The notes below the pieces were generated by a model. It saw only the letters and a list, made by a program, of their open reading frames with translations. It had not been told where the DNA came from and did no database searches. Shown in pieces: positions 6,807-63,500 of a stretch of DNA of 64,000 nt. This DNA comes from Macrostomum lignano. Its lineage: Eukaryota. Position numbers and translations under genes: made by a program. Location: contig NIVC01002030.1 in the NCBI GenBank assembly GCA_002269645.1, forward strand, positions 108,394 through 172,393, written 5' to 3'. Position 1 is the first letter of the stretch; each line of letters starts with the position of its first letter.

Positions 6807-7387
6807 AAACTCAGCCCAGAGCTTTTCTAGTCAAGCAAATACTAGTCGCAGATAATAGTGAAATGAATAAATTTCCCCATAGCAGACTCAAACAGAATTC
6901 TAATTGGCTTATCATTGACTGTTAGTTAACACGAGCGGGCTCTGTGCTCTCCCGCCAGGAATCGCCCGGCCAGATGAGCGTGACTGAGACTCGGAAACCG
7001 TTTCGGTTGTTTCAGCTCCGACCCGCGCAGATGGCCAGCCCATTGCTTGTTCAGTGCGACTCTACCTTCGATCTAACCCAAAATTAGATTTATATCTAGC
7101 ATCTATATATCTATGCTGGTAGGATCCAACGCATTGAGTGCGTGAGCACATTAGTGCTATGCTCAAGCTCTATAGTAACCCCGGCACGCTATGAACTCAA
7201 GAGAGTCCCGACTCTGAGCACTTCCGATTTAGTTGTTCACGGGTCTCAGGTGTGGGGGCTAAGCGAATCTTTGCTGGTTAATGACTGGCAGGCCTGTTAC
7301 AATGGTTTCTTTACCGACAGTGGCTCTCTGGCTGGCTCCAGTGAAAACCGAATTATTTCTAATAGAATCCATGCATTCCGGTTTGCA

Positions 7388-8892: not shown

Positions 8893-9276
8893 ATTGAGTT
8901 GCAAAACTTAAGAACTCCTCGGCAGACAGCTCAAGCTGATGTAGGTATAGACTCACATGTTGTTGCCCATTGCGACTTGGGCGATTTCTATAAAACTGGG
9001 TGGCTGCCTGACAACAGAGAGGAGTTCGTGTGTACGAGTAGTGTATGCACTCGACGACGGTGCATGGTGCCAGCTGGAGTCGCCTGCTAAGGGACTAAAA
9101 AAGTTGAGCTTTTTCTTTGGCAGATTTATCTTGAAAATCCCAAATGGGCGGAGGAGCCAGCCAGTGAGCAGTTGCTCCCAATATCTCATCCCAGGTCTCC
9201 CCTCATCCCAGTGATTCGCAGCAAATCCTCCAATAATTTTGCAACTTTCTCAGGCTCACAGGCCTTTTCTAACTGG

Positions 9277-19642: not shown

Positions 19643-37360
<17,718 letters not shown>

Positions 37361-41948: not shown

Positions 41949-42670
41949 TAGATCCCAGATCCCTATAGATCCCAAATCCCTATATAGATCCCAGATCCCT
42001 ACTATTGATCCCAGATCCCTACTATAGATCCCAGATCCCTACTATAGACCCCAGATCCCTACAATAGATCCCAGATCCCTAAAATAGATCCCAGATCCCT
42101 ACTATAGATCCCAGATCCCTACTATAGATCCCAGATCCCTACAATAGATCCCAGATCCCTACTATAGATCCCAGATCCCTACTATAGATCCCAGATCCCT
42201 ACTATAGATCCCAGATCCCTACTATAGATCCCAGTTCCCTACTATAGATCCCAGATCCCTACAATAGATCCCAGATCCCTACAATAGATCCCAGATCCCT
42301 ACAATAGATCCCAGATCCCTACAATAGACCCCAGATCCCTACAATAGATCCCAGATCCCTACAATAGATCCCAGATCCCTACTATAGATCCCAGATCCCT
42401 ACTATAGATCCCAGATCCCTACAATAGATCCCAGATCCCTAATATAGATCCCAGATCCCTACTATAGATCCCAGATCCCTACTATAGATCCCAGATCCCT
42501 ACTATAGATCCCAGTTCCCTACTATAGATCCCAGATCCCTACAATAGATCCCAGATCCCTACAATAGATCCCAGATCCCTACAATAGATCCCAGATCCCT
42601 ACAATAGATCCCAGATCCCTACAATAGATCCCAGATTCCTACTATAGATCCCAGATCCCTATAGATCCCA
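41949..42670. repeat. Minisatellite, 20-bp unit ATAGATCCCAGATCCCTACT/ACA
   Basis: Direct. Confidence 0.97.
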
Positions 42671-43853: not shown

Positions 43854-43957
43854 GCAACCATTCACCTCCTTGACTCTCCGAAGGGGGACCGCGCTGCGGA
43901 CACAGGCACCACCGGATCTCCCTGCGCGGCACCGCAGCAACAGGTGTCCGTGGTCGC

Positions 43958-44555
43958 AAGCCCATACCATACCATAGACACAACCCCCATACCATACCAT
44001 AGACACAACCCCCATACCATATCATAGACACAACCCCCATACCATACCATAGACACAACCCCCATACCAAACCATAGACACAACCCCATACCATACCATA
44101 GACACAACCCCATGCCATACCATAGACAAAACCCCATGCCATACCATAGACACAAACCCATACCATACCATAGACACAACCCCATACCATACCATAGACA
44201 CAAACCCATACCATACCATAGACACAACCCCCATACCATATCATAGACACAACCCCCATACCATACCATAGACACAACCCCATACCATACCATAGACACA
44301 ACCCCATACCATACCATAGACACAACCCCATACCATACCATAGACACAACCCCATACCATACCATAGACACAACCCCATACCATACCATAGACACAACCC
44401 CATACCATACCATAGACACAACCCCATACCATACCATAGACACAACCCCATACCATACCATAGACACAACCCCATACCATACCATAGACACAACCCCATA
44501 CCATACCATAGACACAACCCCATACCATACCATAGACACAACCCCATACCATACC
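43958..44555. repeat. Minisatellite, 24/25-bp unit CATACCATACCATAGACACAACCC
   Basis: Direct. Confidence 0.97.
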
Positions 44556-45099
44556 AAAGACGAAATTTGGGCTAAAAACATTTAGGAGAATTTATAATTC
44601 TCGGTTCGTGCTATCACAGCAAACGATTTTACACAGACACCAACAGGAGTATTGTAGCAAATTTGTCAGACAGACAGCTGTGCAACCGTTAACAGCAACA
44701 GTTTGCATAGTTTTTTATTAAACGTATTTGGCTTCGGCTGCAGAAGAACAAAAAATTATGATTTATTCTTGCGCGCAAATTCGAAACGTACCGTGCACAG
44801 GCTGCGGAAATGATTGACTGCGGTGCATGTATGCAGGACCGGACTAACCATGTATGGTTGGGTACGGAAATCAATAGGACCGTGAAGCCCACTGTGGAAA
44901 GGTCACTAAGGCAAGACAGACAGAATTTCTCCGAAGGGGGATTCCAGGCTGGCCAGATAACCGTTTAAGAAAAGTATTTCTGCACAGAATGCCGCCATGG
45001 ACAGCTAAAGTTGAAGGACACGGCACTCGCAGATTGTGAAAATTTTATTTGGAAACATTTCACTGCAAAACTAGAATTTCGTGGAATAAGTCGTGTCTT

Positions 45100-45470
45100 T
45101 TGCCTATGGTATAGGGGTTATGTCTATGGTATGGGGTTTATGTCTATGGTATGGGGTTTATGTCTATGGTAAGTTTCTTGTGTCTATGGTAAGGGGTTTG
45201 TGTCTATGGTAAGGGGTTTGTGTCTATGGTAAGGGGTTTTGTCTATGGTAAGTTGTTTGTGTCTATGGTAAGGGGTTTGTGTCTATGGTAAGTTGTTTGT
45301 GTCTATAGTAAGGGATTTGTGTCTATGGTAAGGGGTTTGTGTCTATGTTAAGTTGTTTGTGTCTATGGTAAGGGGTTTGTGTCTATGGTAAGGGGTTTGT
45401 GTCTATGGTAAGGGGTTTGTGTCTATGGTAAGGGGTTTGTGTCTATGGTAAGTTGTTTGTGTCTATGGTA
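45100..45470. repeat. Minisatellite, 20-bp unit GTCTATGGTAAGGGGTTTGT (inverted relative to the 43958-44555 array)
   Basis: Reverse complement ACAAACCCCTTACCATAGAC matches the left array core. Confidence 0.95.
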
Positions 45471-46157
45471 AAAAACCACAGAGTTCGTCTGTGGTAAAAA
45501 CCCAATAGACAAATTGCAACCCAGAAAGAATCTTAGGAAATTCGCTTTCCAGAGCACAGCTGCTATTTGAAGCCTTCCGTTCTGCATTAATATATTTTTC
45601 GAAAATGTATCTTGATGAGTCAGTCTCAGACAAAACCCATAACATACCATTGGACAAAAGTTAGGCTAAAGTCTTACTTTATTAATTTGCGATTAGAAAG
45701 TACCAAAGGTGATTAAGTAATACATTTTGCAGTGAAAACCGGCGTCCAGTGCAAATGCGGCATTCTTCTACTTTTAGTGGTCCATGGCCGCGGCATTAAA
45801 TTGATGCCCAGCAACTGGCGAAGCTGGCAGCCGCTTACTCAAGGAAGCAGCAATGCACTGCCGAAGTAGAAAAAAAAGTTTGAAAAAAAGCTCGCTTGCA
45901 CAGTACTAATTTCGAATGGCAGTCTGATAAATATAGTTAGCTTCAAATTCTTGCACTAAAAACTAAAGCTTGCAAGGGTTTGCATTTTCATTCGCCATGC
46001 ACGAAGTGCTGCAAAACTGCGCTGAATGTCCCTCAACTCGACAAGCAATGTGTAAGCCGATGCTGCATCACCGCACTGTCCCCAACTGTTCAATTCAAGT
46101 GCGCACCGCAAACGCAGTTTCATGATTTCGCAACGCCTCTGTGCCCGGCTGTTTCTC

Positions 46158-49100
46158 TCAGCCTCTCAGCTGATCCACCATGGCGACCCCCACGGCCGAA
46201 GTCCGCCTACCGCTGAGCAGCCAGTCCAGCTGCCTGGACAGCACGTTGAGCTCACGGCTCTGCGCCTCCAGGCTGTCCAGCATGCCGGCCTGGGCGACGC
46301 CGACCTTGTTGAGCCTGACTGCCGCGGCCGCCGACTCCCCGGTTAGGCTGGCTTCGTCGCCACCGACGCCGACGCCGCCAAACCCGTCGAGCCTCGGGCG
46401 CAGCCGCCTGAGCGTGACGGCCTGGTAAAACAGGTACACCATGTACACGGAGCTCCGCTCGCCGATCGCCGCCAGCTTGTCTGCCGAGGCCGCGTCAGCT
46501 GGCGACGCCGATCGGTCGGCGCCGGTGCAGGCGGAGCGCAGCTGGCGGACCAGCCAGCACAGCAGGTTCCACAGCTCCAGCAGCAGGTTGAAGGGCAGCG
46601 GGACGGCCGAACGGGCGGTGAATTCTTCGTTGAGTTCGTAGCAGCCGATCAGCCACATGGAGCGGGACTCCGCGTCCACTGAGTCCACCGTCTTGCTGAA
46701 CAGCGCCACGATCACGTTCAGGAGCAGGATCTGTACGATGGCGATGTATAGGACTAGCAGGATGTAGTGCACCAGGTCGCTGCCGGGGTGCGCCACGCAC
46801 ATGCTAGCGCCATCCGGCGCGGAGGTGTCGTTGCCGTCGCTGGGGCTGTAGTCGCACACGTTTTCGAGTTCGTCCAGGCCGTATTCGCCTGCGAGGGGAG
46901 TTATAACCCAACCCAATATAATCCAATCCAATCCAATCCAATCCAACCCAATATAATCCAACCCAATACAATCCAATCCAACCCAATCCAATCCAATCTA
47001 ATCCAACCCAATCCAATCCAATCTAATCCAATCCAATCTAATCCAATCCAATCTAATCCAATCCAATCCAATCCAATCTAATCCAACCCAATCCAATCCA
47101 ATCCAATCCAATCCAATCCAATCTAATCCAATCCAATCCAATCCAATCCAATCCAATCCAATCCAATCCAATCCAATCCAATCCAATCCAATTTAACCCA
47201 AAAGCCCCTGTTGCCTAGCCTCCAGTGTGTCCGCAGCTACTTACCCACAATGGCATAAAATGTCCTCCTGATGATGGCCACCGCCAGCTCGGCAGGCGGG
47301 ATGTTCACACTTCTGCCGTTCCGGTGGTAGGCGGCGCCCGGCCAGAGCAGAGCGGCGAAGGCGATCCCGAAGCCGGCCATGACCACAGCCAAGATGTACA
47401 GGAACGGGATGAAGTCGCGCCGGATGACCTGGGACAGCATTTTGAGCTTGACGCCGACAGACTCCAGCACGACCGAGACGAACAGGATGCGCAGCCAGAA
47501 GATGAGGGTGGCCGCTACCACGAAGATGTATCCGACGCTGCGGGAGCGGCGCTCGTGGTCCGGCATCAGGGTGCCAAGCAAGTCCCAATCGCTCGAGCTG
47601 AAGCGGCGAGAGACGAAAGCGATCAAGCCGCAGGTGACAGCCACCAAGTCCAAGATGTTCCAGCCGTCGGAGAGGTAGGTGGCGAGCACGCCCCGGTGAT
47701 AACATGCGACCAGCTCGCGAAGCTCCTCGGCCAGAACGCCCAGCATGGCCAAGTAGCTCGCCACCTCCAGGCTGCTGACGTCACCCTGCGTGGTGCCGAA
47801 AACCTTTTATCTATTCAGCCCTCCTTATCTTTGCTTTAGCAGGAAATAAACGTGGAAGAATGCAACTCTTTTCGGCACCTTCTTGCCGTCAGCTCAGCCG
47901 CATGCCAAACAATCTGCCATCACGCCAATAAGTAAAACTGTCTCACCTGAAAGTCGTGCAAAATCATCAGCGACAGCATGGTCACGGTTGCAAAGTAGAA
48001 CGCTACGCTGGCGCGGAACTTCACGCACGGAGTGTCGTAGAAGCGGTGCAGGTCGGCGGCGCAGGCCCGAAGCTCTGAGCACCAGCCGGGTGGATGCGGC
48101 GGCGGCGGCCGATTGGACGAGTTATTCTCGACAGACTCTTCCTCATCGGCGTTAGCGAGCTCATCCTCTTCAACACCGTCGTCGTTGCCCTCGCCATCCG
48201 AGTCGCCCAGCATTTTGTCCAGGAAGCGCCTCTTCTCCGGATCATTCAGCCGACGCAGCAGGCGCGGCAGGAAGGGCAGCAGCGGCGGCAGGAAGCCGCA
48301 GGCGATGAGCAGCTCGCGAACAAACAACGACTGGCCGGGCAGGGAGCGACTGTTAAAGAACTCGCCATACCAGCGCATGTCCGTGGCCAGCTCGGCGATG
48401 TCCAGCTTGACGAGGCTGGTGACGCAGCCGATGGCGGCCAAGTCAAGCACCGTGTAGTCGGCGTAGTTGGGCAGTGGCTGGCTGATGAAGCTGATGGTCA
48501 GGCAGTTGCCCACAGAGCTGTCGACGTCTTTCACCGCGCGCAGCGTCCGCACCGCCAAGGACTCGCAGATGCCGGCGACGCGGGCTGCGGCCTCGGCGAA
48601 CACGTTGTCCACCTCCGGCCGGCGAGCCAGGGCGCGGAGCAGCGTGGCAGAGAGCAGCGCCAGCGGCACCATGTCGAACTCCTCCTGGCGTAGCAGCACC
48701 GTCACCAGCCGCAGGCGACCTGTCAGCACCGCCCAGGTGGTCAGCGACTGCAGCGGATCGCGCAGCGCCCCGACGGCGTCGATCTCACGAGGGAACACCG
48801 GCTCGCGGGAGCGGAACCGCTCGAAGCCGGTCAGCCGGGCCACCGCCCGGTTCAGCCGGCCGGCCTCCACGCGCCAGCGGCCGTCAGGGGAGCCGGCGGC
48901 CAGCTCCCGGCGAATCGCCTGACACGGCCCACCGACAACAGAAGCCGAGGCAGCCGCAGCGGCGGACGACCCAGAGACCGTCGCCTTGCGGTAGCGGAGG
49001 GCCACCGAGTACAGCTGGCGGATGCGCAGTCGGAGCCGGGCGGCCAGCAGCAGCCAGAGACGCCTGCAGGCGGTCAGCCGCCTCAGCTGGCCAGCTTCCT

Positions 49101-50217
49101 GCGTCAAAAGGACGAGTCGGCCGACACGACCGGCCAGTCGGCCAACCAGGCCGGCCGAGTCCGCCAGCTCTAGATCGGGCGTCAGGCCCAGCTGATGCGC
49201 GTCGACCAAGGCGTCGACCAGCCGCTGGCTCGACATTCCCCGCTCGCTGGCGACCGCCTCCAGACCGGCGAGCCGCTCCTTACAGACCCGGTCGCTCGGC
49301 CGGAACGGCGTCTCCCCGTCAAAGGCGGTGCCTGTGTCGATGCTCAGCAGCTGGGCCAGGTAGGCGCGGCCGGGTCGGCTGGAGAGCAGGTCGCTGGCGG
49401 TCTGGCCCCGTCGCAGGCCCGGCCGCAGGGGGGCAGCCAGGCGCCGGCCAAGGCAGTCCAGGCCATCGGTGTCGCGGCCAACCAGCAGGATGTCAACCGG
49501 CGCCCGGCCTCGCCCGTCCAGAGCCAGGTGGTCGGCGCCGCAACGCAGCAGCAGCTGCAGCAGCTCAGCGTTGCCGGCGGCCGCGGCCACGTGCAGGCAA
49601 GTGATTTTCCCGAGGCCGAGCCCGATGGTGGGGCAGCAAGCCAGCCGCGGTTCCGCCGCCAGCAGAGCTGCCGCGGCAGAATTGTTGCCGGCCAGGCAGG
49701 CGCGATGCAGCGGGTTGTCGCCATCGGCGTCAGTCGCCCAGCAGTCGGCACCGGCGGCGAGCAGGGCGAGCAGGCAGGGTGCGTCGCCGCTGTGGCAGCT
49801 CTCGGCTGCCGTGTGCAGCGGCGTCTCGCCGACATCTTCGCCATTATATTCGAAGCTTTCGTTATCACCGCTGCTGCCGCGATCTTCATCAGCGTCGGTG
49901 AGGTCTGGGTCGGCGCCGCTGGCTAGTAAAAGGCGCAGACAGGCCGGCCGGCACTCAGGCGACACGGCCGCGTGCAGCAGGCGGCGCCGGCAACGGCGCC
50001 CGATGACGCCGGCCTCCTCGCAAGCTGCGCAGGGCGCGTTGGGATCGCCGCCGCTACGCAAAAGCTTTTCAAGGGCGTCAGCATCGTCCAGCTGGACGGC
50101 CGCGTGCATGCGGGATGCGAGATCGGCCTGCTGCATGATAATGCGATGCGGCTGGGTCTGCACTGCCTTCTGCTGCTTCAAATAGCTGGCAGAGAAGACG
50201 GAGCGCCGACATGACAT
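46158..50217 (-). CDS. TRPM: TRP cation channel: TRPM-like core with N-terminal ankyrin repeats; exons 50217-47947, 47785-47245, 46888-46158 (3543 nt, ~1180 aa)
   Basis: Ankyrin motifs (GETPLHTAA, GDNPLHRAC, TCLHVAA..GNAELLQLLL..GAD). TRPM MHR4 motifs (DPLQSLTTWAVL, NYADYTVLDLAA, RWYGEF) and pre-S1 RFYDTPCVKF. TM region WNILDLVAV, IFWLRIL, GVKLKML, FYAIVGE, ILLLNVIVALFS, then P.P.PF.L and a C-terminal coiled coil. Exons join in frame at canonical GT/AG sites. Confidence 0.92.
46908..47193. repeat. (ATCCA)n pentanucleotide repeat filling TRP intron 2
   Basis: Direct. Confidence 0.97.
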
Positions 50218-50309
50218 GCACTGCTACAATTCTTTTGCGCGGGCCAATCACAGCACTTCCAGCAAAGGCAGCCTGCACTGTTAAATTTTTACTTGCCACA
50301 CTGGCTTTG

Positions 50310-51050
50310 TCTCCCCATCGAGCTCCGCTGTCTGCCCACCGAGCTCCGCTGTCCCCTCATCGAGCTCCCCTTCTCCTTGTCGAGCTCCGCTGACTCCCCA
50401 TCGAGCTCCCCTTCTTCTTGTCGAGCTCCGCTGTCTCCTCACCGATTTCCCCTTCACCCATCGAGCTCCGCCGTCTGCCCATCGAGCTCCGCTTTCTCCC
50501 CATCGAGCTCCGCTGTCTCCCCATCGAGCTCCGCTGTCTCCCCATCGAGCTCCGCTGTCTGCCCATCGAGCTCCGCTGTCTCCCCATCGAGCTCCGCTTT
50601 CTCCCCATCGAGCTCCGCTGTCTCCCCATCGAGCTCCGCTGTCTCCCCATCGAGCTCCACCCTTCCCCCGATAAGAGCTCCGCTGTCTCCCCACCGAGCT
50701 TCGCAGTCTCCTCATCGAGCTCCGCTGTCTCCTCCCCGATCTCCCCTTCCCCCGATAAGAGCTCCGCTGTCTCCCCATCGAGCTCCGCTGTCTCCCCATC
50801 GAGCTCCGCTGTCTGCCCATCGAGCTCCGCTGTCTCCCCATCGAGCTCCGCTTTCTCCCAATCGAGCTCCGCTGTCTCCCCATCGAGCTCCGCTGTCTCC
50901 TCCCCGATCTCCCCTTCCCCCGATAAGAGCTCCGCTGTCTCCCCATCGAGCTCCGCTGTCTCCCCATCGAGCTCCGCTGTCTCCCCATCGAGCTCCGCTG
51001 TCTCCCCACCGAGCTTCGCAGTCTCCTCATCGAGCTCCGCTGTCTCGTCA
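50310..51050. repeat. GC-rich minisatellite, 21-bp unit CCCCATCGAGCTCCGCTGTCT
   Basis: Direct; lies between two divergent start codons. Confidence 0.95.
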
Positions 51051-51323
51051 TCCAGCTTCATTGTCTCCCCATCATATCGCTTTGTTGTTGCTTACTATTT
51101 TTCAAACGTCACCCGGACTATAGTATCAGCTTTATATTTGGCGGAACTTACTTTTATCCCATAGACAAAGTGCTGTTCCAATTTCCCTAATATGTCGCGT
51201 AGGTCTTATATTCGCTAGAAAGTATCGATTCAGTAGTTTGTCTGACCAACGAGTGCAATCAGATCTGAGAAAGGACTCAAACAGATCAGTCATCAACAGC
51301 CAGCCCATCACCGCACCGTCCCC

Positions 51324-51923
51324 ATGGCGCACTTCCCTCAACCGGACTGCTGGTGCGCCAGCCTCGACGATGAGATGTGCGAGAGCGACGAGGTCGAGCG
51401 GGCCGCCTCGGCCGGGGCTCTGCACAATTTCTACCCGCTGGAGGCCAATCTGTACCCCGGCGAGCGGATGCTGCGGCCCTTCCCCGGCCTGCTGCTGTGG
51501 GACGTCCGGGATCCACCTGGGCCTCTGGGCTGCAGCATCGCTTATGTGCCGCCGCCGCTGGGCTGGACCACCCTGTACACCAACGCCGGCCTCCAGCTGC
51601 ATGTCTGGGTTGGTGACATGCGGCCGCAGGCTCAGGACACTATGGCGGCGTCGGGCGGAGCCGCTGCGACCGCCGCAGCTTTGTCGTCGTCGACGTCGGC
51701 GTCTGGCGCCGGCTGGCGACCGCCCGCGGGCACCCTGCTGCCGAACTGCAACGGCCAGACCCAGGTGGTTGGCCTGAACCTGCCGCCCGCGCCGCCGGTG
51801 CACGAGCACCGCTGCATCGCCTGCGGCCGGCGGGGCCTCAATGTCGACGTTGTGCCGATCGGAGGAAGCGGCGGCGCCGGCGGCTGCGTCGGCGGCGGCC
51901 GGATGGGCGACCAGCAGAGATGA
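51324..51923 (+). CDS. Intronless orphan ORF (199 aa), unknown function
   Basis: ATG-to-TGA ORF with strong GC3 bias like neighbouring real exons; non-repetitive; W/C/P-rich N-terminal half and HEHRCIACG motif; no family recognised. Confidence 0.55.
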   Translation: MAHFPQPDCWCASLDDEMCESDEVERAASAGALHNFYPLEANLYPGERMLRPFPGLLLWDVRDPPGPLGCSIAYVPPPLGWTTLYTNAGLQLHVWVGDMRPQAQDTMAASGGAAATAAALSSSTSASGAGWRPPAGTLLPNCNGQTQVVGLNLPPAPPVHEHRCIACGRRGLNVDVVPIGGSGGAGGCVGGGRMGDQQR

Positions 51924-53074: not shown

Positions 53075-53745
53075 ATAAACTTCACAAAACCAAAGCTTCA
53101 CAACCCCAAAGTTTCACAACCCCAAAGTTTCACAACCCCAAAGTTTCACAACCCCAAAGTTTCACAACCCTAAGTTCCACAATCCCAAAGTTTCACAACT
53201 CCAAAGTTTCACAATCCCAAAGTTTCACAACCCCAAAGTCTCACAGCCTCAGTTTCACAATCCCAAAGTTTCACAACCCAAAGTTCCACAAGCTCAAAGT
53301 TTCACAACCCTAAAGTTTCACAACCCCAAAGTTTCACAGCCTCAGTTTCACAATCCCAAAGTTTCACAACCCCAAAGTTTCACAGCCTCAGTTTCACAAT
53401 CCCAAAGTTTCACAACCCCAAAGTTTCACAACCCTAAAGTTTCACAACCTCAGTTTCACAATCCCAAAGTTTCACAACCCCAAAGTTTCACAACCCCAAA
53501 GTTTCACAACCCAAAGTTTCACAACCCCAAAGTTTCACAATCCCAAAGTTTCACAATCCCAAAGTTTCACAACCCCAAAGTTTCACAATCCCAAAGTTTC
53601 ACAACCCCAAAGTTTCACAACCCAAAGTTTCACAATCCCAAAGTTTCACAACCCCAAAGTTCACAACCCCAAAGTTTCACAATCCCAAAGTTCACAACCC
53701 CAAAGTTTCACAACCCCAAATTTTCACAACCTTGAAGTTTCACAA
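53075..53745. repeat. Minisatellite, 16-bp unit CCCCAAAGTTTCACAA
   Basis: Direct. Confidence 0.95.
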
Positions 53746-54776
53746 CGCTGCATAAAGGTTTGAGAAAACTCTTCAGTTCGATTGGGGGTATGAAGAAGCA
53801 GAATGTGTCCTGAATATAATTAGGCACGCAACCGGTTTTTATACCTTTACTAAAAAACAAGTCGGAAATGCCTTCAAAAGACTGCGAGAAAAATGGGAGT
53901 AAAAAATAAGACGGAATGCAAATCTTTTGAAAAGCAGAAAAGCTGCGGAAGCATCGCGTCGCGTCCTCCTTCTGGGTCGGCCGTTTGCTCGCGGGCTTAT
54001 TAAATAATACGGGGTTAGAGAGTTCAAGCAGGACTGTATCGAAATTGCCTCAATGAGAATGGGCGGCGGGGCTGAGTAACGAAGGAACTCTTCTTTAATC
54101 AGAAAGCGGAGAGGAGAGAAATACCAACTGCAAAACTGCACTGGGGCCCGGCTCTGATTTCACAAGATTTCAAGCCCCCCATTAGTTTGGCGATTTGCCA
54201 GATGCAAATTCAGGGCATGGGAGGGGGTCGCAAACCACTCGGATTTTAAATCAGATATAATTAAAATCCTTGCGTATACCAGCGTACACTTTGGGAAATT
54301 TTGTGCTTGGCTAAAAATACCCCGTCGACTTAGATGAATAAGTTGCTGGTTGCGACTCCAAGACAGAGACAGACGCCCCAACTTTAATTTCATGTTGCCA
54401 GGCCGGCTTTTTGAGGCTTTTAGGATTCGTGTTTATACATACCCCCCAACCTCAGTTCCGTTTGTTTGAAGCATCGAAAGCCGGCCAGCTCCGAATCTTG
54501 GTGCTGACAAAGCGAAGAAGTCATAAAACTGTTGCTAATTTTACTTCTTCCTTTACGCCCGTTTTGGCTTTAAAGGCTTGTTATGCCGTTCTATTAATAC
54601 CTGAGTTTCCAACTGAACTCGCTAAAATTAGCATTCCCACCCAACCGAAAATTCATCAGCCGCCACCAGCTATACATTCTGTGCCCTTCTCCTGGTGTTG
54701 CTGGTAAAAGAATAACAGAAAATAACAATGATAGAAAATAATTTTTGTTTGCTCAGCCTCAGCCATCTCAGCCAGA

Positions 54777-56124: not shown

Positions 56125-56485
56125 TGAGATGAAGGGAAGTGAGGTGAGATAAATGGAAGTGAGGTGAAGGGAGGTGAGATGAATGAGGTGAGATGAAGGG
56201 AGCTGAGATGAAGGGAGCTGAGATGAAGGGAGCTGAGATGAAGGGAGCTGAGATGAAGGGAGCTGAGATGAAGGGAGCTGAGATGAAGGGAGCTGAGATG
56301 AAGGGAGCTGAGATGAAGGGAGCTGAGATGAAGGGAGCTGAGATGAAGGGAGCTGAGATGAAGGGAGCTGAGATGAAGGGAGCTGAGATGAAGGGAGCTG
56401 AGATGAAGGGAGCTGAGATGAAGGGAGCTGAGATGAAGGGAGCTGAGATGAAGGGAGCTGAGATGAAGGAAGCTGAGATGAAGGG
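56125..56485. repeat. Minisatellite, 15-bp unit GAGATGAAGGGAGCT
   Basis: Direct. Confidence 0.96.
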
Positions 56486-59400
56486 AATTGGGATGATGAG
56501 TAGTGAAAGCCCGAGGACAAGAGATGGAAAAAAATTAAGAACGCTATCACACATGATAAATATACTTTGTATGTGCAAAATTTTCTGTTAACACGTTTTT
56601 TCTCTTCCGCGTAACTGGGGCATCACCAACCATGCTTCCTTCCTATCCCGATTTCTAGCTCGAGTTGTCCTTGACTTAGAGATCTTATTTGAAACAAAGC
56701 CTGTAGGCGCCCGCCCAACCCTCCGCAGCGTTCCTTCCGCCTGAACAAACACGTGACTCTTGTGTCCCAGTTCGGGGCTAGCTAAAATTCTAACAGAATT
56801 TTCTTCCTATAAATGGGAAAACAGGGGGCGGTATACAAACAGAAATTGGGAGAGTCTTTGTCCGAACTGCTGACTAATTGCGCTCCACGTCTTGCGAAGG
56901 TCCGAATCCGCACAAAGCTTTGGAGTCCCGACAGCTTGGGCTCTGTCTGGGCAGTTGGCCTTAACGTTTCTCGAATGGCCTAACTTATATGTATGTAAAC
57001 TGACTTCTAATACAGCATACTCTGGGATATTTATTCCCTTCGATAAGAGATCTCGCTAGTAATTAAGGAATATTGAGGAAGACATGAAAAAAGAAGAGAC
57101 CGTCAATATTCGGGCGGAGTAAAAGGAAGGTAAAAAATCTGAAGTTAGCCATTAACCTGCGCATGCAGCAATTGCGCTCGCTGCAGCACAGGTGCAGGCA
57201 GTGGGGCAGGCCGGTGTAGCAACAATGCTTCCTCGAACAGAAACCATAGGCAGTCGTAGGGGGGGGGGCGCAAACTGGGCTGGCGGAGTCTGAAAATCGG
57301 GTCCCGCCTTGACCAGCCTCCCCACCGCGGAGGCTGCAAATTGCTTCTAATGGAAAGCCAGTCGTGGAGGGGGGAACTGGCAAGTTCCAACCTTCCAAGT
57401 TCCAACCTCCACCAATCCTGTAGTCTCTGCAGCTTTACTTTTCTGTAGGAAAGTAAAGGAATGAAATTACAGAAATGAAGCTCGCATTTTATATAGTTGA
57501 AGAAATCTGGCTGCTTTCGTAAAGAAATTTTCAGCTGACGCAACGTCGGGGCCCAATTATTGGAACTTTGCATCCTCCTTGTGCCCCCGGGTTTTTTGTG
57601 ATGAAGCCAACATTTTGCCATTTTATTGCTTCTCTTGCTCACATATAACTCGGCCCACACGAACGGTGGTAAAGGCGGTGGGATTGAAAGTCTTGTAAAG
57701 TCTTGTCACCACACCTTACCACTCTTTGTTACATGCACTCGCCCCCTTTTTGCCTCAAATTTTCTGTTGCGCCCAATGCAGGACCAGAGCCGATGAGTCA
57801 CGATCTGTTCTTTCTAACCATTTTTTCCATGCCACTACAAGTCTACAAGCCACCTCGGAGTCGGGGCGCTTTCACATATCACAAGATCTAAATTTTCAAG
57901 TCGCCGAAACTTTAGACGACCCAGCCAGCTGTCGCACTCGTTGGAACTGAAGTTCACATCGCCTAAATGCCTAAAAACGTTAACATCATGAAATCGCATG
58001 TACAAACCACTGAGACAAACCCTGAGACAAATTGTGCAGAAGTAAGGACTGATATCTAATAATTTAAGCAATTAGGCTATTTGAAGTTTTGGCGATGTGA
58101 AATGAAGGTTTTATGAAATTCCCAACCTGTCGAGTCTCAGCTCATCTCCCATGCGGACGTACCAGGAAGCCCTGAGAAAAGTCATGGTGATTACAGTGAT
58201 AGGAATTCTGAAAGAAACTGATTCATACATAGCAGATCAATCAGCCATCCATCAAATGATCTTACGATCTTCGTAGGACAAAGGAAGTCGCTTAGTATGG
58301 TTGATTGACATGATGAAAACTGAACTGTAACATCCGTCGTCTGCCAAAATCCTAGAGGGACACGGGTGGGCGAACTGATATTGCTTATACGATTACGAAT
58401 GACTAAAATGAAGGCTGCGTCACGTTCTAAAAATAGCATCACACGACATCTCCATTAGTAATTCATATATGCTTTACTATGCTATACTTTGTTCGGCATG
58501 ACTGCCCTACCGATAAGGCGGAAAACTCTCAGTCCTGCTGGGGTTGGTTCGATTCGAATTAATCAGAATTTTCTCTGCCTTATTTATGGCTTTTCGATGC
58601 AGAACGCACTGGTGGAGCCGCCAAGAATGAATCTCTCAGGAGAAGGAAGAGCGCATTTATAAATATGTTTCGCGTTAAGGGTAAACGAGCTGATATACAT
58701 AAGTGCAGCCATTCAAATCGCCTGAACTTCCACATTTAGCACTTTTCGCAGCCCAATTCAAAGACTTGCTGCTTTGCTGTCTGTCTATCTGTCGCATGCG
58801 CGAAATATAATTATTAGTGTAGCAATTGTGCATTAGCTGGTCCGCATGGCATGCGTTGCCTCGGTGCCTGTTCCTGCCTTAATAACAGAGCCGCAGACAC
58901 GGAAATGAGAGCTACACTGCTGCTATCGCTGCGCACAGGCACATGTACTACACACACACACACTGATACACAGGCTGCACCACGTACCGCTCTACCGAAA
59001 GATAACCAAGCACTCGTAGGCTGTGTGCATGGCGGCTCGATGCGTTCGGTTTAGCTGAGCTCGCCGAATCACTCAACTGACCGAAGGATCGAGTTGAATC
59101 GAGAGAGAGAGAAAGAGAGATCAGAGTGCGCGGGTGGGGACTGTGGAATTAAATTTATGTCAGGGAATGACTATTTTTTTCAATGCGAATTTCGCAATTT
59201 CAGTAAACTATGGAACCGCAGCTACATGACTGGCATGCATGAGTTCAGTTGCTTGTTATCTCAAAATTGTTGAGCTTTGCGTAAGCATACTCACAGTGCG
59301 TTGTAGAGGAAAACAAACCAAATTTACCAAGCACATCTGGAGCGATTTTTGCTGACTAGAACTTTTTGTATGTACTAGCACGATTAGGACATGCTGGTGT

Positions 59401-59499
59401 CTCCTGACTCCTAATATCCATGCGATTCAGAATGAGTCAGCTGAGCTCAGTCACAGGTTTCTCACCAAAATTGTGAAAATCAGGATTGGATCCTGGCTC

Positions 59500-60525
59500 T
59501 TTCTGTGTCAGATTCTGTGAAGCTATATCAGATACTGCCAACCCCTGTGTCAGATGCTGTCAAACTATGTCAAGTAGACACTGCCAAGTGCCAACCCCTG
59601 TGTCAGATGCTGTCAAACTATGTCAGATACTGCCAACCCCTGTGTCAGATGCTGTCAAGCTATGTCAGATACTGCCAACCCCTGTGTCAGATGCTGTCGT
59701 CATGTGTCAGATGCTGTCAAACTATGTCAGGTACTGCCAACCCTGTGTCAGATGCTGTCAAACTATGTCAGATACTGCCAACCCCTGTGTCAGATGCTGT
59801 CAAACTATGTCAGATACTGCCAACCCCTGTGTCAGATGCTGTCGTCATGTGTCAGATGCTGTCAAACTATGTCAGATACTGCCAACCCCTGTGTCAGATG
59901 CTGTCGTCATGTGTCAGATGCTGTCAAACTATGTCAGGTACTGCCAACCCCTGTGTCAGATGCTGTCAAACTATGTCAGATACTGCCAACCCCTGTGTCA
60001 GATGCTGTCGTCATGTGTCAGATGCTGTCAAACTATGTCAGATACTGCCAACCCCTGTGTCAGATGCTGTCAAACTATGTCAGATACTGCCAACCCTGTG
60101 TCAGATGCCGTCGCCATGTGTCAGATGCTGTCAAGCTATGTCAGATACTGCCAACCCCTGTGTCAGATGCTGTCGTCATGTGTCAGATGCTGTCAAACTA
60201 TGTCAGATACTGCCAACCCCTGTGTCAGATGCTGTCGTCATGTGTCAGATGCTGTCAAACTATGTCAGGTACTGCCAACCCCTGTGTCAGATGCTGTCAA
60301 ACTATGTCAGATACTGCCAACCCCTGTGTCAGATGCTGTCGTCATGTGTCAGATGCTGTCAAACTATGTCAGATACTGCCAACCCCTGTGTCAGATGCTG
60401 TCGTCATGTGTCAGATGCTGTCAAACTGTCAGGTACTGCCAACCCCTGTGTCAGATGCTGTCAAACTATGTCAGATACTGCCAACCCCTGTGTCAGATGC
60501 CGTCGCCATGTGTCAGCTGCTGTCG
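59500..60525. repeat. Composite minisatellite of 20-22-bp subunits each starting TGTCAGAT
   Basis: Subunits TGTCAGATGCTGTCAAACTA, TGTCAGATACTGCCAACCCCTG and TGTCAGATGCTGTCGTCATG in variable order. Confidence 0.96.
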
Positions 60526-63500
60526 CTCTCTATCTAAAAGTTCTGGCGCTATCCTAGCTAGCCTAAAAGTTTAAATTTCTAAAAAAACAAGCTGGACATT
60601 CCCTGATGCAACCAAAATATAACTCTTGGATAGTACTGAGCTTGACTGCACTCGGGTTTCGGGACAGTGGGTCCAGTAAAAAGTTTATGAGCCGGCGGCT
60701 TGCCTTCTTTGATCCCAGCCCAGCACTAGGAGCAGGAGGGGAAATTCCCAACGTTCGTCGTGCGCATGATAAAATCGGATCGCTAAATAGCCCCCCCGCC
60801 ACAGATGGTGGGATAAATGCACCGGGAGATTCCGGAGATTTAGACAACACGTTGTTAAGTAGTCCTTGGATTTAGATTGGTAGATTCAGCATGGAGTCTG
60901 CGCCGGACCATTGGTAAAATCTGAACAAAAAGTGACGAAAATGTGACATTTTTTGTTGATTCCCTTGCAGTCACCATGGTGATCTGACAATGACCAGAAA
61001 AAATGATTAGGCTTTCAGTTGTTGCAATGCCAAATAAATGATACCTTATATTATATTGCTCCGTGACCTTTTTGCAAATAGCATTTTGCAAATCGGCGAC
61101 CATCTTGGCTAGTTTGGTTTATTCAATAGTTGAATAGTCTATGGTCATAAGTTGGAGCTTCGACCCACACCCAATTCCGGCCCAAATGTCTATGGTACAA
61201 TACCAGTAATACAACTGACGGCGCCTGGAACTAGACCCAATCACGTGGGTGGAGGTCTCTCACGTGCTTCACTTGCGGAGGGAAGTATGCGTGTGCATTG
61301 CCAGTCCAAAAGAAACACTATTAGACACAGTGTTAGCCATGAATTTTATATTTGGGTTCAAATGGAATACCGTCCATGATATCCACTGGCTTTAGAGAGG
61401 CTTGGCTGAGTCATGTGACATGCTAGACAAGGCCAGACGCGCATTGTCGGTCCCGTGCTCAGCGCTCCACTCCTCTTTCTTTTTCCTCGCATGAGTCACT
61501 CACTCACTCGCTTTCCTCTCAAGCCTGGGCTGAACTCGCGCGCACACTTAGCATGCCGGGGGGGGGGTTGCCACAGCCTGCCCAGAGCTCTCTTTTCCAA
61601 GTCCTATAATAGCTGAGCAAGGATGGGGCGTGCGTGCGGTCCACCACCAACCCTCCCTGCCCCCAGGGGAGTCTGAGCTCAGAGCGCAACCCTGGAGCGC
61701 AAGATGACTCAACGGCGTACAGTCTGAAAGAATTGCCTGTAACAGTCTCCTTACTATCCTTGCAATAGCGCTTAAAATGTGAATTTTTCAATCAATATCA
61801 AATAAACAATGAGGAGCAAATCAATACAGCATGAAGTCAATAGTCAATGCTTGGGGCCTAGCAGCCGACTTAAATAAGCTTCAGTCGGATACATACAAAA
61901 AATTTCTGGCTGATCTTCCTTTCCATTTTCCTGAATTTCCTGAATAGGTCGCATTAGTCAACAAAGCGCCATCCAGCATGACTCATCTGAAACACACTGA
62001 GGCAGCAGCTAGCTATGTGAAAATCCTTCTCTCGCTAAACAAAGACCGAATAGCTTAGCTATCCACGATTAATGCAGGTCTTTAGCTCCAAACATGAACA
62101 GACAGGAAATTGTAAGAATTTAGTTTTGTCTTGGCTCGGGACTCGATTAAGTATATTAATATGTATTTAGCACGGCCGAGAGAGGGGAGCGAAGTCTGCG
62201 AAGAGACGGGGAGCAAGTTAAATTATCGTTAAAAAATGATGACAAAAATCGAACTAAATGAATTGGAAAAATTGCGCGATTAATTTAAGAGAAATTACAC
62301 AAGCTGTGCAAGAAGACGGAGAATGAATAGAGCAAAACACAACACCAATTAGCGTGCTCGGTATTTAACTTAATACAAAAAATCAGTATTTGAGGTTGTC
62401 CGCGGAAAAATTCTGGGGCTTTGACTTTTCCAAATGAATGGTAAATCTCTTGATAACAAGTGCAAAAATAGCCTTGAATGATGATATGACAAAGTTCTGA
62501 TTCGGAATTCTCAATACTCATCAGCCGGTGTCGGAAACACACGTCGCTAGCGAATCACAAGACCGCTTCCAAAATGTGGGAGACCTTGCCGAGTCATGAC
62601 CTCACAGGAGGTGCTGCACAGCTCACTAATTCATAATTCGGATTCAATAATTCAATGTTTCCATGTCTCGGCTCGGTCTCCTCCACATTTAGGAACCTCT
62701 AGCTTTGCACCTGAGTGAGCAGTGTTTAGAAAATATAGCAGACGAGTGTTCTCAGACGCACAGATATACTCCAAGCATAGTGGGAGATATGATATAGGGC
62801 GGATATTTATAAATCTATTGTCACGCAGAGGGGGGAGATGCAGAATTGTTATCGCGGATTAGAACTTCTGGTCAGAGCAATTTGCTATATGAAGTATGAA
62901 TAAATGAAATATAATATAGAGTCCATAGTCCATACCGATATTAGCAGCATCAATCCAGCAGTAAAAATGTACACGGAGCAGGTGAGGGCACCATTTTCAA
63001 ACGATCGCAACAGGTGGTGTTAAATTTGAAAAAAAACGATAGCATTGGTTTTGCAGGCGAAAGTGCAAATATCGAACAGCGATGCAGACACAAAAACTCG
63101 ATGGTCACACCCGCACAAAGATATTCAAAGATATTGCCTATGTTAGCAAAAATAGTCGACACTAAGCTGGAACAGTGGATTAAAATAATTTATCATAGCG
63201 GCTAGATTCCATCAAACTATATAAAATGGGAGGGCATATCTCAAACAGCGAATTTCTGAGGGGGGGGGGGCGATTTGCGGGTACTCGAATTAAATGATTT
63301 TAGTGCCATCAGCTGAGTAAAATGCACTGCAGTTGTTGTGCTTGGATTTGCAGCCATATAAAGCAATAGAAAAATACCTAAACTATATGCTGGATCTCTC
63401 GACGTGAAAAGCTATCTAGATATAAAAGTACGCACAAAATCTCGTTAAAAATTGTCAGTTAAAGCGGACAGTCCGTCTTCAGCTAGGAGCGCACAGTGCA

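What the first reader, a model, noticed from the sequence alone, without database searches (positions are those of the whole stretch)
47947..50217. Ankyrin-TRPM hybrid channel
Seen: one uninterrupted 757-codon exon encodes about 5 ankyrin repeats plus a partial sixth (aa ~35-245), a ~240-aa helical Arg/Leu-rich linker, then TRPM MHR4 motifs (WAVL..., YTVLDLAA, W.G), pre-S1 FYDTPCVKF and S1. The fusion therefore cannot be a gene-model artefact. The remaining exons give a TRPM-type S2-S6, TRP helix and coiled coil, with no kinase or NUDT9H domain. Established: canonical TRPM (and TRPS) channels have SLOG/MHR1-3 at the N-terminus and lack ankyrin repeats, which typify TRPA/C/N/V. Inference: a domain-swapped TRP subtype, possibly undescribed, with new gating inputs.
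Basis: partly seen in the sequence, partly recalled or inferred. Interest (0 to 1): 0.8.

Follow-up and report, generated by a model that had tools for sequence, protein, structure and literature searches.

The report
Flatworm ankyrin-TRPM channel, already described
This is a real, intact gene of the free-living flatworm Macrostomum lignano for a TRPM-type cation channel whose usual N-terminal nucleotide-binding (SLOG) module is replaced by ankyrin repeats, but this build is already known from TRPM_MCLZ, the schistosome channel targeted by the drug meclonazepam, so this is a new member of a known kind.

Summary
One uninterrupted minus-strand exon (50217..47947, 757 codons) encodes five ankyrin repeats plus a partial sixth, a helical linker of about 240 aa, the TRPM MHR4 region, pre-S1 and S1. 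Two further exons (47785..47245 and 46888..46158) complete a 1180-aa channel.

The window is Macrostomum lignano contig NIVC01002030.1. No SLOG-coding exon lies anywhere in the window.

The channel core is TRPM-type by three measures:
- A family profile gives E = 4e-89 to nvTRPM2.
- All of the top 60 solved-structure hits by sequence are TRPM.
- The top 35 Foldseek hits are TRPM.

The gene sits in a well-supported, flatworm-only clade of channels with ankyrin repeats and no SLOG domain. M. lignano has at least 12 paralogue groups. The clade also contains single genes from liver flukes and tapeworms. Those parasite members carry the published residue fingerprint of Sm.TRPM_MCLZ.

The "possibly undescribed" reading is refuted. 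Three papers (2023-2026) describe TRPM_MCLZ as a channel with ankyrin repeats and no SLOG domain, and call the group "TRPM-like".

Two things do appear to be new. One is the presence and large expansion of this clade in a free-living flatworm. The other is that this copy has lost most of the meclonazepam-pocket residues.

Most likely function (inferred): a Ca2+-regulated, divalent-permeable cation channel.

Verdict: new member of a known kind, moderate to low interest.

The parts
47947..50217 (-). Exon 1 (757 codons). It runs from the start codon through five ankyrin repeats plus a partial sixth (aa ~35-250), a helical linker (aa ~250-485), MHR4 (aa ~485-660), an acidic disordered loop, pre-S1 (FYDTPCVKF) and S1.
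   Evidence: ORF and donor site. Pfam Ank and PF25508 matches. Sequence match to PDB TRPM4/nvTRPM2 from aa 475 onward. AlphaFold secondary structure.
47245..47785 (-). Exon 2. It encodes S2-S5 and the pore helix. It holds the voltage-sensor-like Ca2+-site residues E778, E781, N800 and D803, and the start of the VGEY filter.
   Evidence: Splice sites and reading frame. Pfam Ion_trans 5.9e-09. Alignment to the nvTRPM2 Ca2+ site.
46158..46888 (-). Exon 3. It encodes the outer pore loop, S6, the TRP helix (W1016...E1026), the PLPFN motif, two long C-terminal helices (rib/pole-like, aa 1069-1105 and 1121-1163) and the stop codon.
   Evidence: The product is colinear with paralogue P0187 to the C-terminus.
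46908..47192 (.). Pentanucleotide microsatellite (CCAAT x57 on the + strand) that fills most of intron 2.
   Evidence: Tandem Repeats Finder. Sequence read directly.
50308..51073 (.). 21-bp minisatellite (about 37 copies) beginning about 90 bp upstream of the start codon. No coding potential related to TRPM was found in it.
   Evidence: tblastn of 186 TRPM-like proteins found nothing outside 46100-50300.

Best explanation
The locus is an intact three-exon gene of Macrostomum lignano. It encodes one subunit (1180 aa) of a tetrameric cation channel of the flatworm 'TRPM-like' clade, whose characterised member is schistosome TRPM_MCLZ.

Anatomy (shown):
- Five to six ankyrin repeats stand where canonical TRPMs have the SLOG/MHR1-2 nucleotide-binding domain.
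- They are followed by an all-helical linker, MHR4 and pre-S1.
- Next comes a voltage-sensor-like S1-S4 domain that keeps the TRPM Ca2+-binding pentad, here E-E-N-D-E in place of E-Q-N-D-E.
- The pore has a VGEY filter with the acidic residue typical of divalent-permeable TRPMs (TRPM1/3/6/7, nvTRPM2).
- The protein ends with a TRP helix and two long C-terminal helices.

Mechanism (inferred): cytosolic Ca2+ binding in the S2-S3 site, probably together with a ligand or lipid in the same voltage-sensor-like cavity, opens a non-selective, Ca2+-permeable pore. This is the cavity that meclonazepam occupies in Sm.TRPM_MCLZ. The ankyrin domain would supply protein-protein or regulatory input in place of ADP-ribose/nucleotide sensing.

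This copy keeps only 3 of the 7 published meclonazepam-contact positions, so sensitivity to that drug is not expected.
For: Source organism: window 26730-32091 is 100% identical to M. lignano NIVC01002030.1.

Gene model: canonical splice sites and an open frame. The product is colinear with the 1176-aa paralogue P0187 from M1 to the C-terminus.

TRPM-type core:
- A single-sequence search of PDB sequences aligns aa 475-1057 to TRPM4 546-1099 and to nvTRPM2 569-1140.
- The family profile gives nvTRPM2 4e-89 and TRPM3 2e-78, and all 60 listed hits are TRPM.
- The same profile scores 49 bits on a TRPN protein against at least 128 bits on every full-length TRPM-like hit (the lowest, a 311-aa fragment, scores 95).
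- The AlphaFold model (pLDDT 72.3, pTM 0.68) has TRPM structures as its top 35 Foldseek hits.

No SLOG domain: there is no LSDAT match in the protein or in 8+8 relatives. There is no tblastn hit to SLOG-bearing TRPMs elsewhere in the window.

Clade: channels with ankyrin repeats and no SLOG are monophyletic. Bootstrap is 66 on the transmembrane region alone and 100 on MHR4 plus transmembrane region.

Link to TRPM_MCLZ:
- The Opisthorchis member P0210 has H861/H865/Y898/E902/R977. That is Sm.TRPM_MCLZ H827/H831/Y864/E868/R943 shifted uniformly by +34 (residues from PMC10788528).
- O. viverrini P0044 shows the published duplication of the channel-domain exon (PMC12861061).

Ca2+ site and filter: with the nvTRPM2 site confirmed in PMC5976436.

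Channel function of the family: Sm.TRPM_MCLZ gives Ca2+ signals and currents in HEK293 cells (PMC10788528).
Against: - No expression or functional data exist for this gene.
- Its exact product was not found in the protein collection, so it may be unannotated or modelled differently.
- No sequence of Smp_333650 itself was available. The link to TRPM_MCLZ rests on a residue fingerprint, the exon-duplication signature and the literature tree, not on a direct alignment.
- The Q-to-E change in the Ca2+ pentad and the divergent pocket could alter or abolish Ca2+ and ligand gating.
- The Pfam MHR4 match of this copy is below threshold (18.6 against 27 bits).
- Deep placement relative to other TRPMs is unresolved: bootstrap is 27 and 9.5 for a sister relation to other flatworm TRPMs.
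Confidence: 0.8

Rival explanations
1. The clade with ankyrin repeats and no SLOG is not a derived TRPM. It would be an old, separate TRP lineage, sister to TRPM and perhaps TRPS, that kept the ancestral N-terminal ankyrin repeats of group-1 TRP channels and never acquired SLOG.
For: In the MHR4 plus transmembrane-region tree the clade branches next to all other sampled TRPMs rather than inside them. [quoted passage not shown] Support for a sister relation to other flatworm TRPMs is very low (27% and 9.5%).
Against: An exhaustive HMMER search of 1.84 billion representatives found named members only in flatworms. An ancient lineage would therefore need losses everywhere else. The clade shares MHR4, the TRPM Ca2+ pentad and the TRP/PPPFN motifs with TRPMs. 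Long branches and a single distant outgroup make a basal position suspect. Flatworm TRPMs with ankyrin repeats plus SLOG exist as possible intermediates.
Confidence: 0.12
2. The gene is a recently inactivated or never-expressed duplicate, one of many paralogues in a polyploid genome, and makes no functional channel.
For: M. lignano has at least 12 paralogue groups. The exact product was not found in the protein collection. The pocket residues have diverged. Microsatellites fill intron 2 and the upstream region.
Against: There are 1180 codons without a stop or frameshift, and all four splice sites are canonical. The protein carries the family residue at all 25 invariant columns of the 24-sequence family alignment; for the 40 columns listed as nearly invariant the output gives this protein's residue but not whether it is the majority one. 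At 44-48% identity to its nearest paralogue it is an old copy, and an old pseudogene would have decayed.
Confidence: 0.08
3. The lack of SLOG is an artefact. A SLOG-coding exon would lie further upstream, beyond the window, and be spliced onto an internal acceptor in exon 1.
For: Flatworm TRPMs with ankyrin repeats followed by SLOG do exist (P0059, P0117). Only 13.8 kb upstream of the start codon is visible.
Against: In those proteins SLOG lies after the ankyrin repeats, not before them. Here the ankyrin repeats run on to S1 in one exon with no room for SLOG. Stop codons lie in frame just upstream of M1. Twenty or more relatives in several species have the same SLOG-less layout and similar N-termini. 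tblastn finds no TRPM-like coding sequence elsewhere in the window.
Confidence: 0.02
4. It is really a TRPN-, TRPA-, TRPC- or TRPV-type channel, which normally carry ankyrin repeats, whose core only superficially resembles TRPM.
For: It has N-terminal ankyrin repeats. NOMPC appears at Foldseek rank 36 and in the PDB sequence search, but only through its ankyrin repeats.
Against: All top sequence and fold matches of the core are TRPM. A TRPN protein scores 49 bits against at least 128 bits for full-length TRPM-like proteins. MHR4 and the TRPM Ca2+ pentad are present.
Confidence: 0.01

Closest known systems
Schistosoma mansoni TRPM_MCLZ (Smp_333650) and its orthologues in parasitic flatworms, the 'TRPM-like' clade (Park et al. 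2024, PMC10788528; Sprague et al. 2024, PMC11731825; Rohr et al. 2026, PMC12861061)
   Same: Both have N-terminal ankyrin repeats, no MHR1/2-SLOG domain, a TRPM-type S1-S6, a TRP helix and C-terminal helices, with no NUDIX or kinase domain. They fall in the same clade (bootstrap 66 and 100). Both genes have three coding exons. The pocket residues equivalent to E868, R943 and Y1117 are kept (E778, R856, Y1021).
   Different: The window protein is only about 21-24% identical to the fluke and tapeworm members. Exon boundaries differ: here S1 lies in exon 1, whereas in parasites exon 3 encodes the whole channel domain. Positions H827, H831, Y864 and H946 are S737, Y741, V774 and F859 here. The Ca2+ pentad is EENDE rather than EQNDE. 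The filter is VGEY rather than the fluke type. The host is free-living, and the gene is one of at least 12 paralogue groups rather than a single gene.
Canonical TRPM channels (nvTRPM2, TRPM3/1, TRPM4/5, TRPM7, TRPM2/8)
   Same: MHR4, pre-S1, the voltage-sensor-like domain with its Ca2+ site, pore helix and filter, S6, the TRP helix with the PPPFN motif, and rib/pole-like C-terminal helices. The profile E-values run from 4e-89 to 1e-57, and these structures are the Foldseek top hits.
   Different: There is no SLOG/MHR1-2 domain. Canonical ankyrin repeats stand in its place. Homology of the linker to MHR3 is only weakly indicated: hhalign E 0.0045 over 84 columns, and a linker-only profile finds nothing in the PDB sequences.
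Flatworm TRPMs with ankyrin repeats plus SLOG (M. lignano PAA85706.1 = P0059; Clonorchis KAG5447154.1 = P0117)
   Same: They are flatworm-specific, with ankyrin repeats at the extreme N-terminus of a TRPM-type channel.
   Different: They keep a full LSDAT_euk/SLOG domain and a full-length PF25508 match. They belong to a different, well-supported flatworm TRPM clade. A sister relation to the clade without SLOG is not supported.
TRPS (ced-11-like; Himmel et al. 2020, PMC7306681)
   Same: It is a TRPM-related lineage recognised as distinct from TRPM.
   Different: TRPS has SLOG and NUDIX domains and no ankyrin repeats. TRPS was not identified among the nearest relatives here.
TRPN/NOMPC, TRPA1, TRPC and TRPV
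   Same: N-terminal ankyrin repeats ahead of a six-helix TRP channel core.
   Different: The core is far less similar (49 bits against at least 128). These channels have no MHR4 and no TRPM Ca2+ pentad; the TRPN outgroup shows T-N-G-K-N at those columns.

Membership tests
TRPM (melastatin) family in the strict sense | Transmembrane core and TRP helix homologous to TRPM rather than to other TRP families | tested here: met
   A single-sequence search and a family-profile search of PDB sequences return only TRPM among the channel-core matches, down to E = 4e-89. Foldseek ranks 1-35 are TRPM. A TRPN protein scores 49 bits against at least 128 bits for full-length TRPM-like hits.
TRPM (melastatin) family in the strict sense | N-terminal SLOG / MHR1-2 domain (Pfam LSDAT_euk) | tested here: not met
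   No LSDAT match in the protein or in 16 clade relatives. No SLOG-like coding sequence in the window. The region is occupied by ankyrin repeats.
TRPM (melastatin) family in the strict sense | MHR4 / TRPM2-like domain (PF25508) before pre-S1 | tested here: met
   This copy alone is weak (18.6 bits, cut-off 27). Seven of the eight relatives scanned pass the cut-off (28.3-45.8 bits; P0037 has 24.9). Alignments to TRPM structures span MHR4.
TRPM (melastatin) family in the strict sense | MHR3 helical domain between SLOG and MHR4 | tested here: inconclusive
   hhalign of the linker against the MHR3 region gives E 0.0045 with probability 7.7% over 84 colinear columns. A linker-only profile finds no TRPM in the PDB sequences. 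AlphaFold models the linker as a confident all-helical domain.
TRPM (melastatin) family in the strict sense | C-terminal coiled-coil tetramerisation helix | tested here: inconclusive
   Long helices are modelled at aa 1069-1105 and 1121-1163. There is no Pfam TRPM_tetra match, and no tetramer was modelled.
Flatworm 'TRPM-like' clade (TRPM_MCLZ type) | N-terminal ankyrin repeats with no SLOG, on a TRPM-type core | tested here: met
   The architecture is as described in PMC11731825 and PMC12861061.
Flatworm 'TRPM-like' clade (TRPM_MCLZ type) | Phylogenetic grouping with TRPM_MCLZ orthologues of parasitic flatworms | tested here: met
   Neighbour-joining bootstrap is 66 (transmembrane region, 309 columns) and 100 (MHR4 plus transmembrane region, 483 columns). 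The parasite members were identified by the H/H/Y/E/R fingerprint with identical spacing and by the exon-3 duplication. Smp_333650 itself was not available for direct alignment.
Flatworm 'TRPM-like' clade (TRPM_MCLZ type) | Meclonazepam-binding pocket residues (H827, H831, Y864, E868, R943, H946, Y1117) | tested here: not met
   The window protein has S737, Y741, V774, E778, R856, F859 and Y1021, so 3 of 7 are kept. This is a pharmacological feature of some schistosome orthologues. It does not define the clade.
Flatworm 'TRPM-like' clade (TRPM_MCLZ type) | Forms a Ca2+-conducting cation channel | not testable with these tools
   Shown only for Sm.TRPM_MCLZ, in HEK293 cells (PMC10788528).
TRPN / TRPA / TRPC / TRPV (TRP families that carry ankyrin repeats) | Channel core most similar to that family | tested here: not met
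   Similarity to NOMPC is confined to the ankyrin repeats.

The most novel reading that the evidence does not exclude
The TRPM-like clade with ankyrin repeats and no SLOG could be an old, family-level TRP lineage comparable to TRPS. It would branch beside all TRPMs and have retained or independently built an ankyrin N-terminus. Its large radiation in free-living Macrostomum (at least 12 paralogue groups, with altered Ca2+ site and pocket) would then reflect a diversified sensory channel repertoire, of which parasites kept a single druggable copy.
Probability: 0.1. Interest if true: 0.6.

Novelty: new member of a known kind. Interest (0 to 1): 0.3.

Why it matters
TRPM_MCLZ is a validated anthelmintic target whose natural activator and physiological role are unknown. 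Finding that its clade is present and strongly expanded in Macrostomum lignano has two consequences. First, it dates the ankyrin-for-SLOG architecture to at least the common ancestor of macrostomids and Neodermata. Second, it offers an experimental route to the native function of this channel type, because M. lignano is a free-living flatworm that can be handled genetically (the latter from my own knowledge, not tested here).

The natural variation among paralogues could also inform structure-activity work on the drug pocket. The variable features are the pocket residues, the S4 F/H/Y position, E-E-N-D-E against E-Q-N-D-E, and the filter type.

The finding does not reveal a new class of channel.

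Tried and rejected
- The first homology search with the full protein was swamped by bacterial ankyrin proteins. The NompC-like hit P0012 shared only ankyrin repeats and was kept as an outgroup.
- Two further word-indexed searches, one with the part lacking ankyrin repeats and one with a family profile, returned only three M. lignano proteins. The family was recovered only by the exhaustive HMMER search.
They were replaced by tblastn with 186 TRPM-like proteins.
- The linker as MHR3: hhalign is weak and the linker-only profile search of PDB sequences was negative. The question is left open.
- AlphaFold with a 4-sequence alignment was unusable (pLDDT 41.5). It was repeated with 24 sequences.
- The first bootstrap run with Biopython neighbour-joining timed out and was re-implemented.
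Whether GenBank annotates this gene is therefore unknown.
- The supplementary FASTA of PMC12861061, which contains Smp_333650, is not held. No direct alignment to Sm.TRPM_MCLZ was possible.
- A sister relation between the clade without SLOG and the flatworm TRPMs with ankyrin repeats plus SLOG, which would suggest an intermediate by SLOG loss, was considered but has no bootstrap support (27% and 9.5%).
Full report
OBSERVATION

The minus strand carries an ORF of 765 codons at 47920..50217. Reading the DNA shows a consensus donor (CAG|gtgaga) that ends the exon at 47947.

A second exon (47785..47245) has acceptor cgcag|GGT and donor GTGG|gtaagt. A third exon (46888..46158) has acceptor tcgcag|GC. 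Both join in frame and give a product of 1180 aa. The exons are about 70% G+C in a background of 42-52%.

Pfam finds ankyrin-repeat families over aa 134-243 (Ank 2.8e-18). It finds a weak TRPM2-like/MHR4 match at aa 485-594 (E 0.0023, below the cut-off) and Ion_trans on exon 2. By eye the repeats begin near aa 35, 76, 128, 164 and 201, with a partial sixth at 236-250.

SOURCE AND CONTEXT

A single-exon Kv channel ORF in the window (28730..30091) is encoded identically on Macrostomum lignano contig NIVC01002030.1 (assembly GCA_002269645.1). The fetched 5.4-kb locus is 100% identical to window 26730-32091. The window is therefore M. lignano, a free-living flatworm. It is crowded with mini- and microsatellites. 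These include a CCAAT array that fills intron 2 and a 21-bp array that starts about 90 bp upstream of the start codon.

IS THE FUSION REAL, AND IS SLOG REALLY ABSENT?

The ankyrin repeats, linker, MHR4, pre-S1 and S1 lie in one uninterrupted exon, so no gene-model error can have created the junction. In-frame stop codons lie just upstream of M1.

tblastn with 186 TRPM-like proteins, more than 65 of which carry SLOG domains, gave 264 hits. All of them fall inside 46100-50300. No SLOG-coding exon exists in the 13.8 kb upstream or anywhere else in the window.

The product is colinear from M1 to the C-terminus with the 1176-aa M. lignano paralogue P0187 (47-48% identity). That paralogue's gene has about five exons, so the single large exon is particular to this copy.

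WHAT THE CORE IS

- A single-sequence search of PDB sequences aligns aa 475-1057 with TRPM4 546-1099 and with nvTRPM2 569-1140. The only non-TRPM hits come from the ankyrin repeats.
- A profile of the part lacking ankyrin repeats, built from 11 family members, scores nvTRPM2 at 4e-89 and TRPM3 at about 2e-78. TRPM1, 4, 7, 5, 2 and 8 score between 1e-77 and 1e-57. All 60 listed hits are TRPM.
- The same profile gives a NompC-like TRPN protein 49 bits, against at least 128 bits for every full-length TRPM-like protein collected.
- An AlphaFold2 model built on a 24-sequence family alignment reached pLDDT 72.3 and pTM 0.68. Its best 35 Foldseek matches in the PDB are TRPM structures, with alignments of 735-1088 columns.

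THE LINKER

AlphaFold models aa 250-410 as a confident all-helical domain. This fits an MHR3-like helical domain and not an alpha/beta SLOG fold.

Sequence evidence for homology to MHR3 is weak. hhalign against the SLOG-to-MHR4 region of 47 TRPMs gives E 0.0045 and probability 7.7% over 84 colinear columns. A linker-only profile finds no TRPM among the PDB sequences. I leave this open.

THE FAMILY

An exhaustive HMMER search of 1.84 billion representative proteins found 702 relatives. The nearest ones all have ankyrin repeats, the C-terminal part of PF25508 and Ion_trans, and none has an LSDAT match.

All named members are flatworm proteins:
- M. lignano contributes at least 12 groups that differ by more than about 50%: Mlig030258, 004154, 033956/026745, 022043/007691, 012389, 011337, 030565, 019746/014463/025374/032509, 020550, 023207, A0A1I8GVB8, and the window gene.
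- Single genes come from Opisthorchis, Dicrocoelium, Fasciolopsis and Schistocephalus.
- A few members are unnamed.

In neighbour-joining trees these proteins form one clade. Bootstrap is 66 with 309 transmembrane-region columns and 100 with 483 MHR4 plus transmembrane-region columns. The M. lignano subclade has support of 91 and 100.

A separate, well-supported, flatworm-only TRPM clade contains proteins that have both N-terminal ankyrin repeats and SLOG (M. lignano P0059, Clonorchis P0117). A sister relation between the two clades has no support (27% and 9.5%). With MHR4 included, the clade without SLOG sits beside all other sampled TRPMs. With one distant outgroup and long branches, I do not regard that position as established.

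COMPARISON WITH WHAT IS KNOWN

The literature settles the novelty question.

- Park et al. (J Biol Chem 2024, PMC10788528) identified Sm.TRPM_MCLZ (Smp_333650) as the schistosome target of meclonazepam. It is encoded in three exons. It has a long N-terminal domain with multiple ankyrin-like repeats, a TRPM-type S1-S6 and a TRP helix. It had earlier been labelled TRPM7-like.
- Sprague et al. (2024, PMC11731825) state that TRPM_MCLZ lacks the N-terminal MHR1/2 or SLOG domain and has ankyrin-repeat modules instead.
- Rohr et al. [quoted passage not shown] They also report a duplicated channel-domain exon in Clonorchis, Opisthorchis and Paragonimus.

I could not obtain the Smp_333650 sequence. The parasite members of my clade nevertheless carry its published fingerprint. 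In O. felineus P0210 the residues H861, H865, Y898, E902 and R977 reproduce Sm H827, H831, Y864, E868 and R943 with one uniform offset of +34. O. viverrini P0044 contains two tandem channel domains, which matches the reported exon duplication. The Fasciolopsis and Schistocephalus members are auto-annotated as TRPM7.

The window gene is therefore a free-living-flatworm member of an already described architecture. None of the papers I read mentions free-living flatworms for this clade, so the Macrostomum expansion appears to be unreported. An earlier survey noted in passing that some invertebrate TRPM hits show a few ankyrin repeats (PMC10725132). Himmel et al. (PMC7306681) describe TRPM and TRPS as free of ankyrin repeats. 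Flatworm TRPM_MCLZ-type channels are an exception to that generalisation.

HOW IT MOST LIKELY WORKS

Shown: the TRPM Ca2+-binding pentad of nvTRPM2 consists of E893 and Q896 on S2, N918 and D921 on S3, and E1110 on the TRP helix (PMC5976436). It aligns with E778, E781, N800, D803 and E1026 of the window protein. All 13 M. lignano clade members have E-E-N-D-E. The trematode members, and 80 of about 100 other TRPMs in the alignment, have E-Q-N-D-E.

Shown: the filter reads FYAIVGEYGLDE. The acidic GE corresponds to the YGE/FGE that is commonest among the other TRPM-like proteins aligned (54 and 14 of about 100); TRPM3 and nvTRPM2 read YGE in the alignments. That an acidic residue here goes with divalent permeability (TRPM1/3/6/7), and that TRPM2/4/5/8 have FGQ instead, is from my own knowledge of TRPM pores.

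Inferred: the protein forms a tetrameric, non-selective, Ca2+-permeable cation channel. It is co-activated by cytosolic Ca2+ at the voltage-sensor-like site and probably by a ligand or lipid in the same cavity, which is where meclonazepam binds in the schistosome orthologue. The ankyrin domain replaces nucleotide or ADP-ribose sensing by SLOG with a protein-interaction or regulatory module.

Of the seven published meclonazepam-contact positions the window protein keeps three (E778, R856, Y1021). The others are S737, Y741, V774 and F859. I therefore predict no meclonazepam sensitivity.

WHAT REMAINS UNCERTAIN

- Expression of this copy.
- Its annotation status.
- The deep phylogenetic position of the clade.
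- Whether the ankyrin repeats were gained in a flatworm TRPM followed by loss of SLOG, or are older.

A pseudogene reading is unlikely. The frame is intact over 1180 codons, the splice sites are canonical, and the protein carries the family residue at all 25 invariant columns of the 24-sequence family alignment.

VERDICT

The domain-swap interpretation is correct. The claim of an undescribed subtype is wrong. This is a new member of a known kind, with modest added value from the previously unreported expansion in a free-living model flatworm.

Noticed in passing
window 28730-30091 (+), and 25279-25761 (-): A single-exon Shaker-type Kv channel gene (453 aa; BTB_2/T1, Ion_trans and Ion_trans_2) lies on the strand opposite a cytosolic-carboxypeptidase-like M14 peptidase gene and within its span. 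The peptidase product is 1151 aa and its gene runs across the whole fetched locus. The Kv gene therefore appears nested in an intron of the peptidase gene.
   Followed up: partly
window 42000-42661, 43957-44561, 45104-45471, 46908-47192, 50308-51073, 53081-53746, 56136-56486; also 100-2100, 7300-9090, 31800-33560, 34300-35220, 59480-60575: The window is unusually dense in mini- and microsatellite arrays (periods of 5-60 bp, 20-57 copies, 82-96% matches). They create many long spurious ORFs on both strands. One array fills intron 2 of the TRP gene, and another sits about 90 bp upstream of its start codon.
   Followed up: partly
proteins P0059 (M. lignano PAA85706.1) and P0117 (Clonorchis sinensis KAG5447154.1): These flatworm TRPMs carry ankyrin repeats N-terminal to a complete SLOG (LSDAT_euk) domain, followed by a full TRPM2-like domain and the channel. 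This is a third architecture, seen in three species. It could be an intermediate in the ankyrin-for-SLOG exchange, but the trees give no support for that.
   Followed up: partly
protein P0044 (Opisthorchis viverrini KER32702.1, 1906 aa): The gene model contains two complete channel domains in tandem (S1, S2, S4-S5 and TRP motifs at 687/734/822/960 and again at 1366/1413/1501/1644). This matches the alternative exons 3a and 3b reported for opisthorchiid TRPM_MCLZ. The annotated protein probably concatenates two mutually exclusive exons.
   Followed up: partly
window 51324-51923 (+) and 34298-35932 (-): Two G+C-rich ORFs look like coding sequence but have no informative Pfam match. One is 199 aa, on the opposite strand about 1.1 kb upstream of the TRP gene. 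The other is 544 aa, with a non-repetitive N-terminal half of about 250 aa before a repeat-derived tail. If the first is a gene, it bounds the 5' end of the TRP gene.
   Followed up: partly
P0060 and P0077 have the Lys/Asn/Ile-rich composition of an A+T-rich genome and branch at the base of the parasite subclade. P0077 has lost the Ca2+ pentad (E-Y-L-N-K).
   Followed up: no
protein P0053 (M. lignano A0A1I8FKH2, 814 aa, named a calponin-homology-domain protein): It matches about 100 residues (residues 230-330 of the 932-aa query that lacks the ankyrin repeats, so about aa 478-578 of the full protein, the start of MHR4) at 44% identity in four stretches. It is probably a fragmentary or chimeric gene model that contains pieces of another paralogue.
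   Followed up: no
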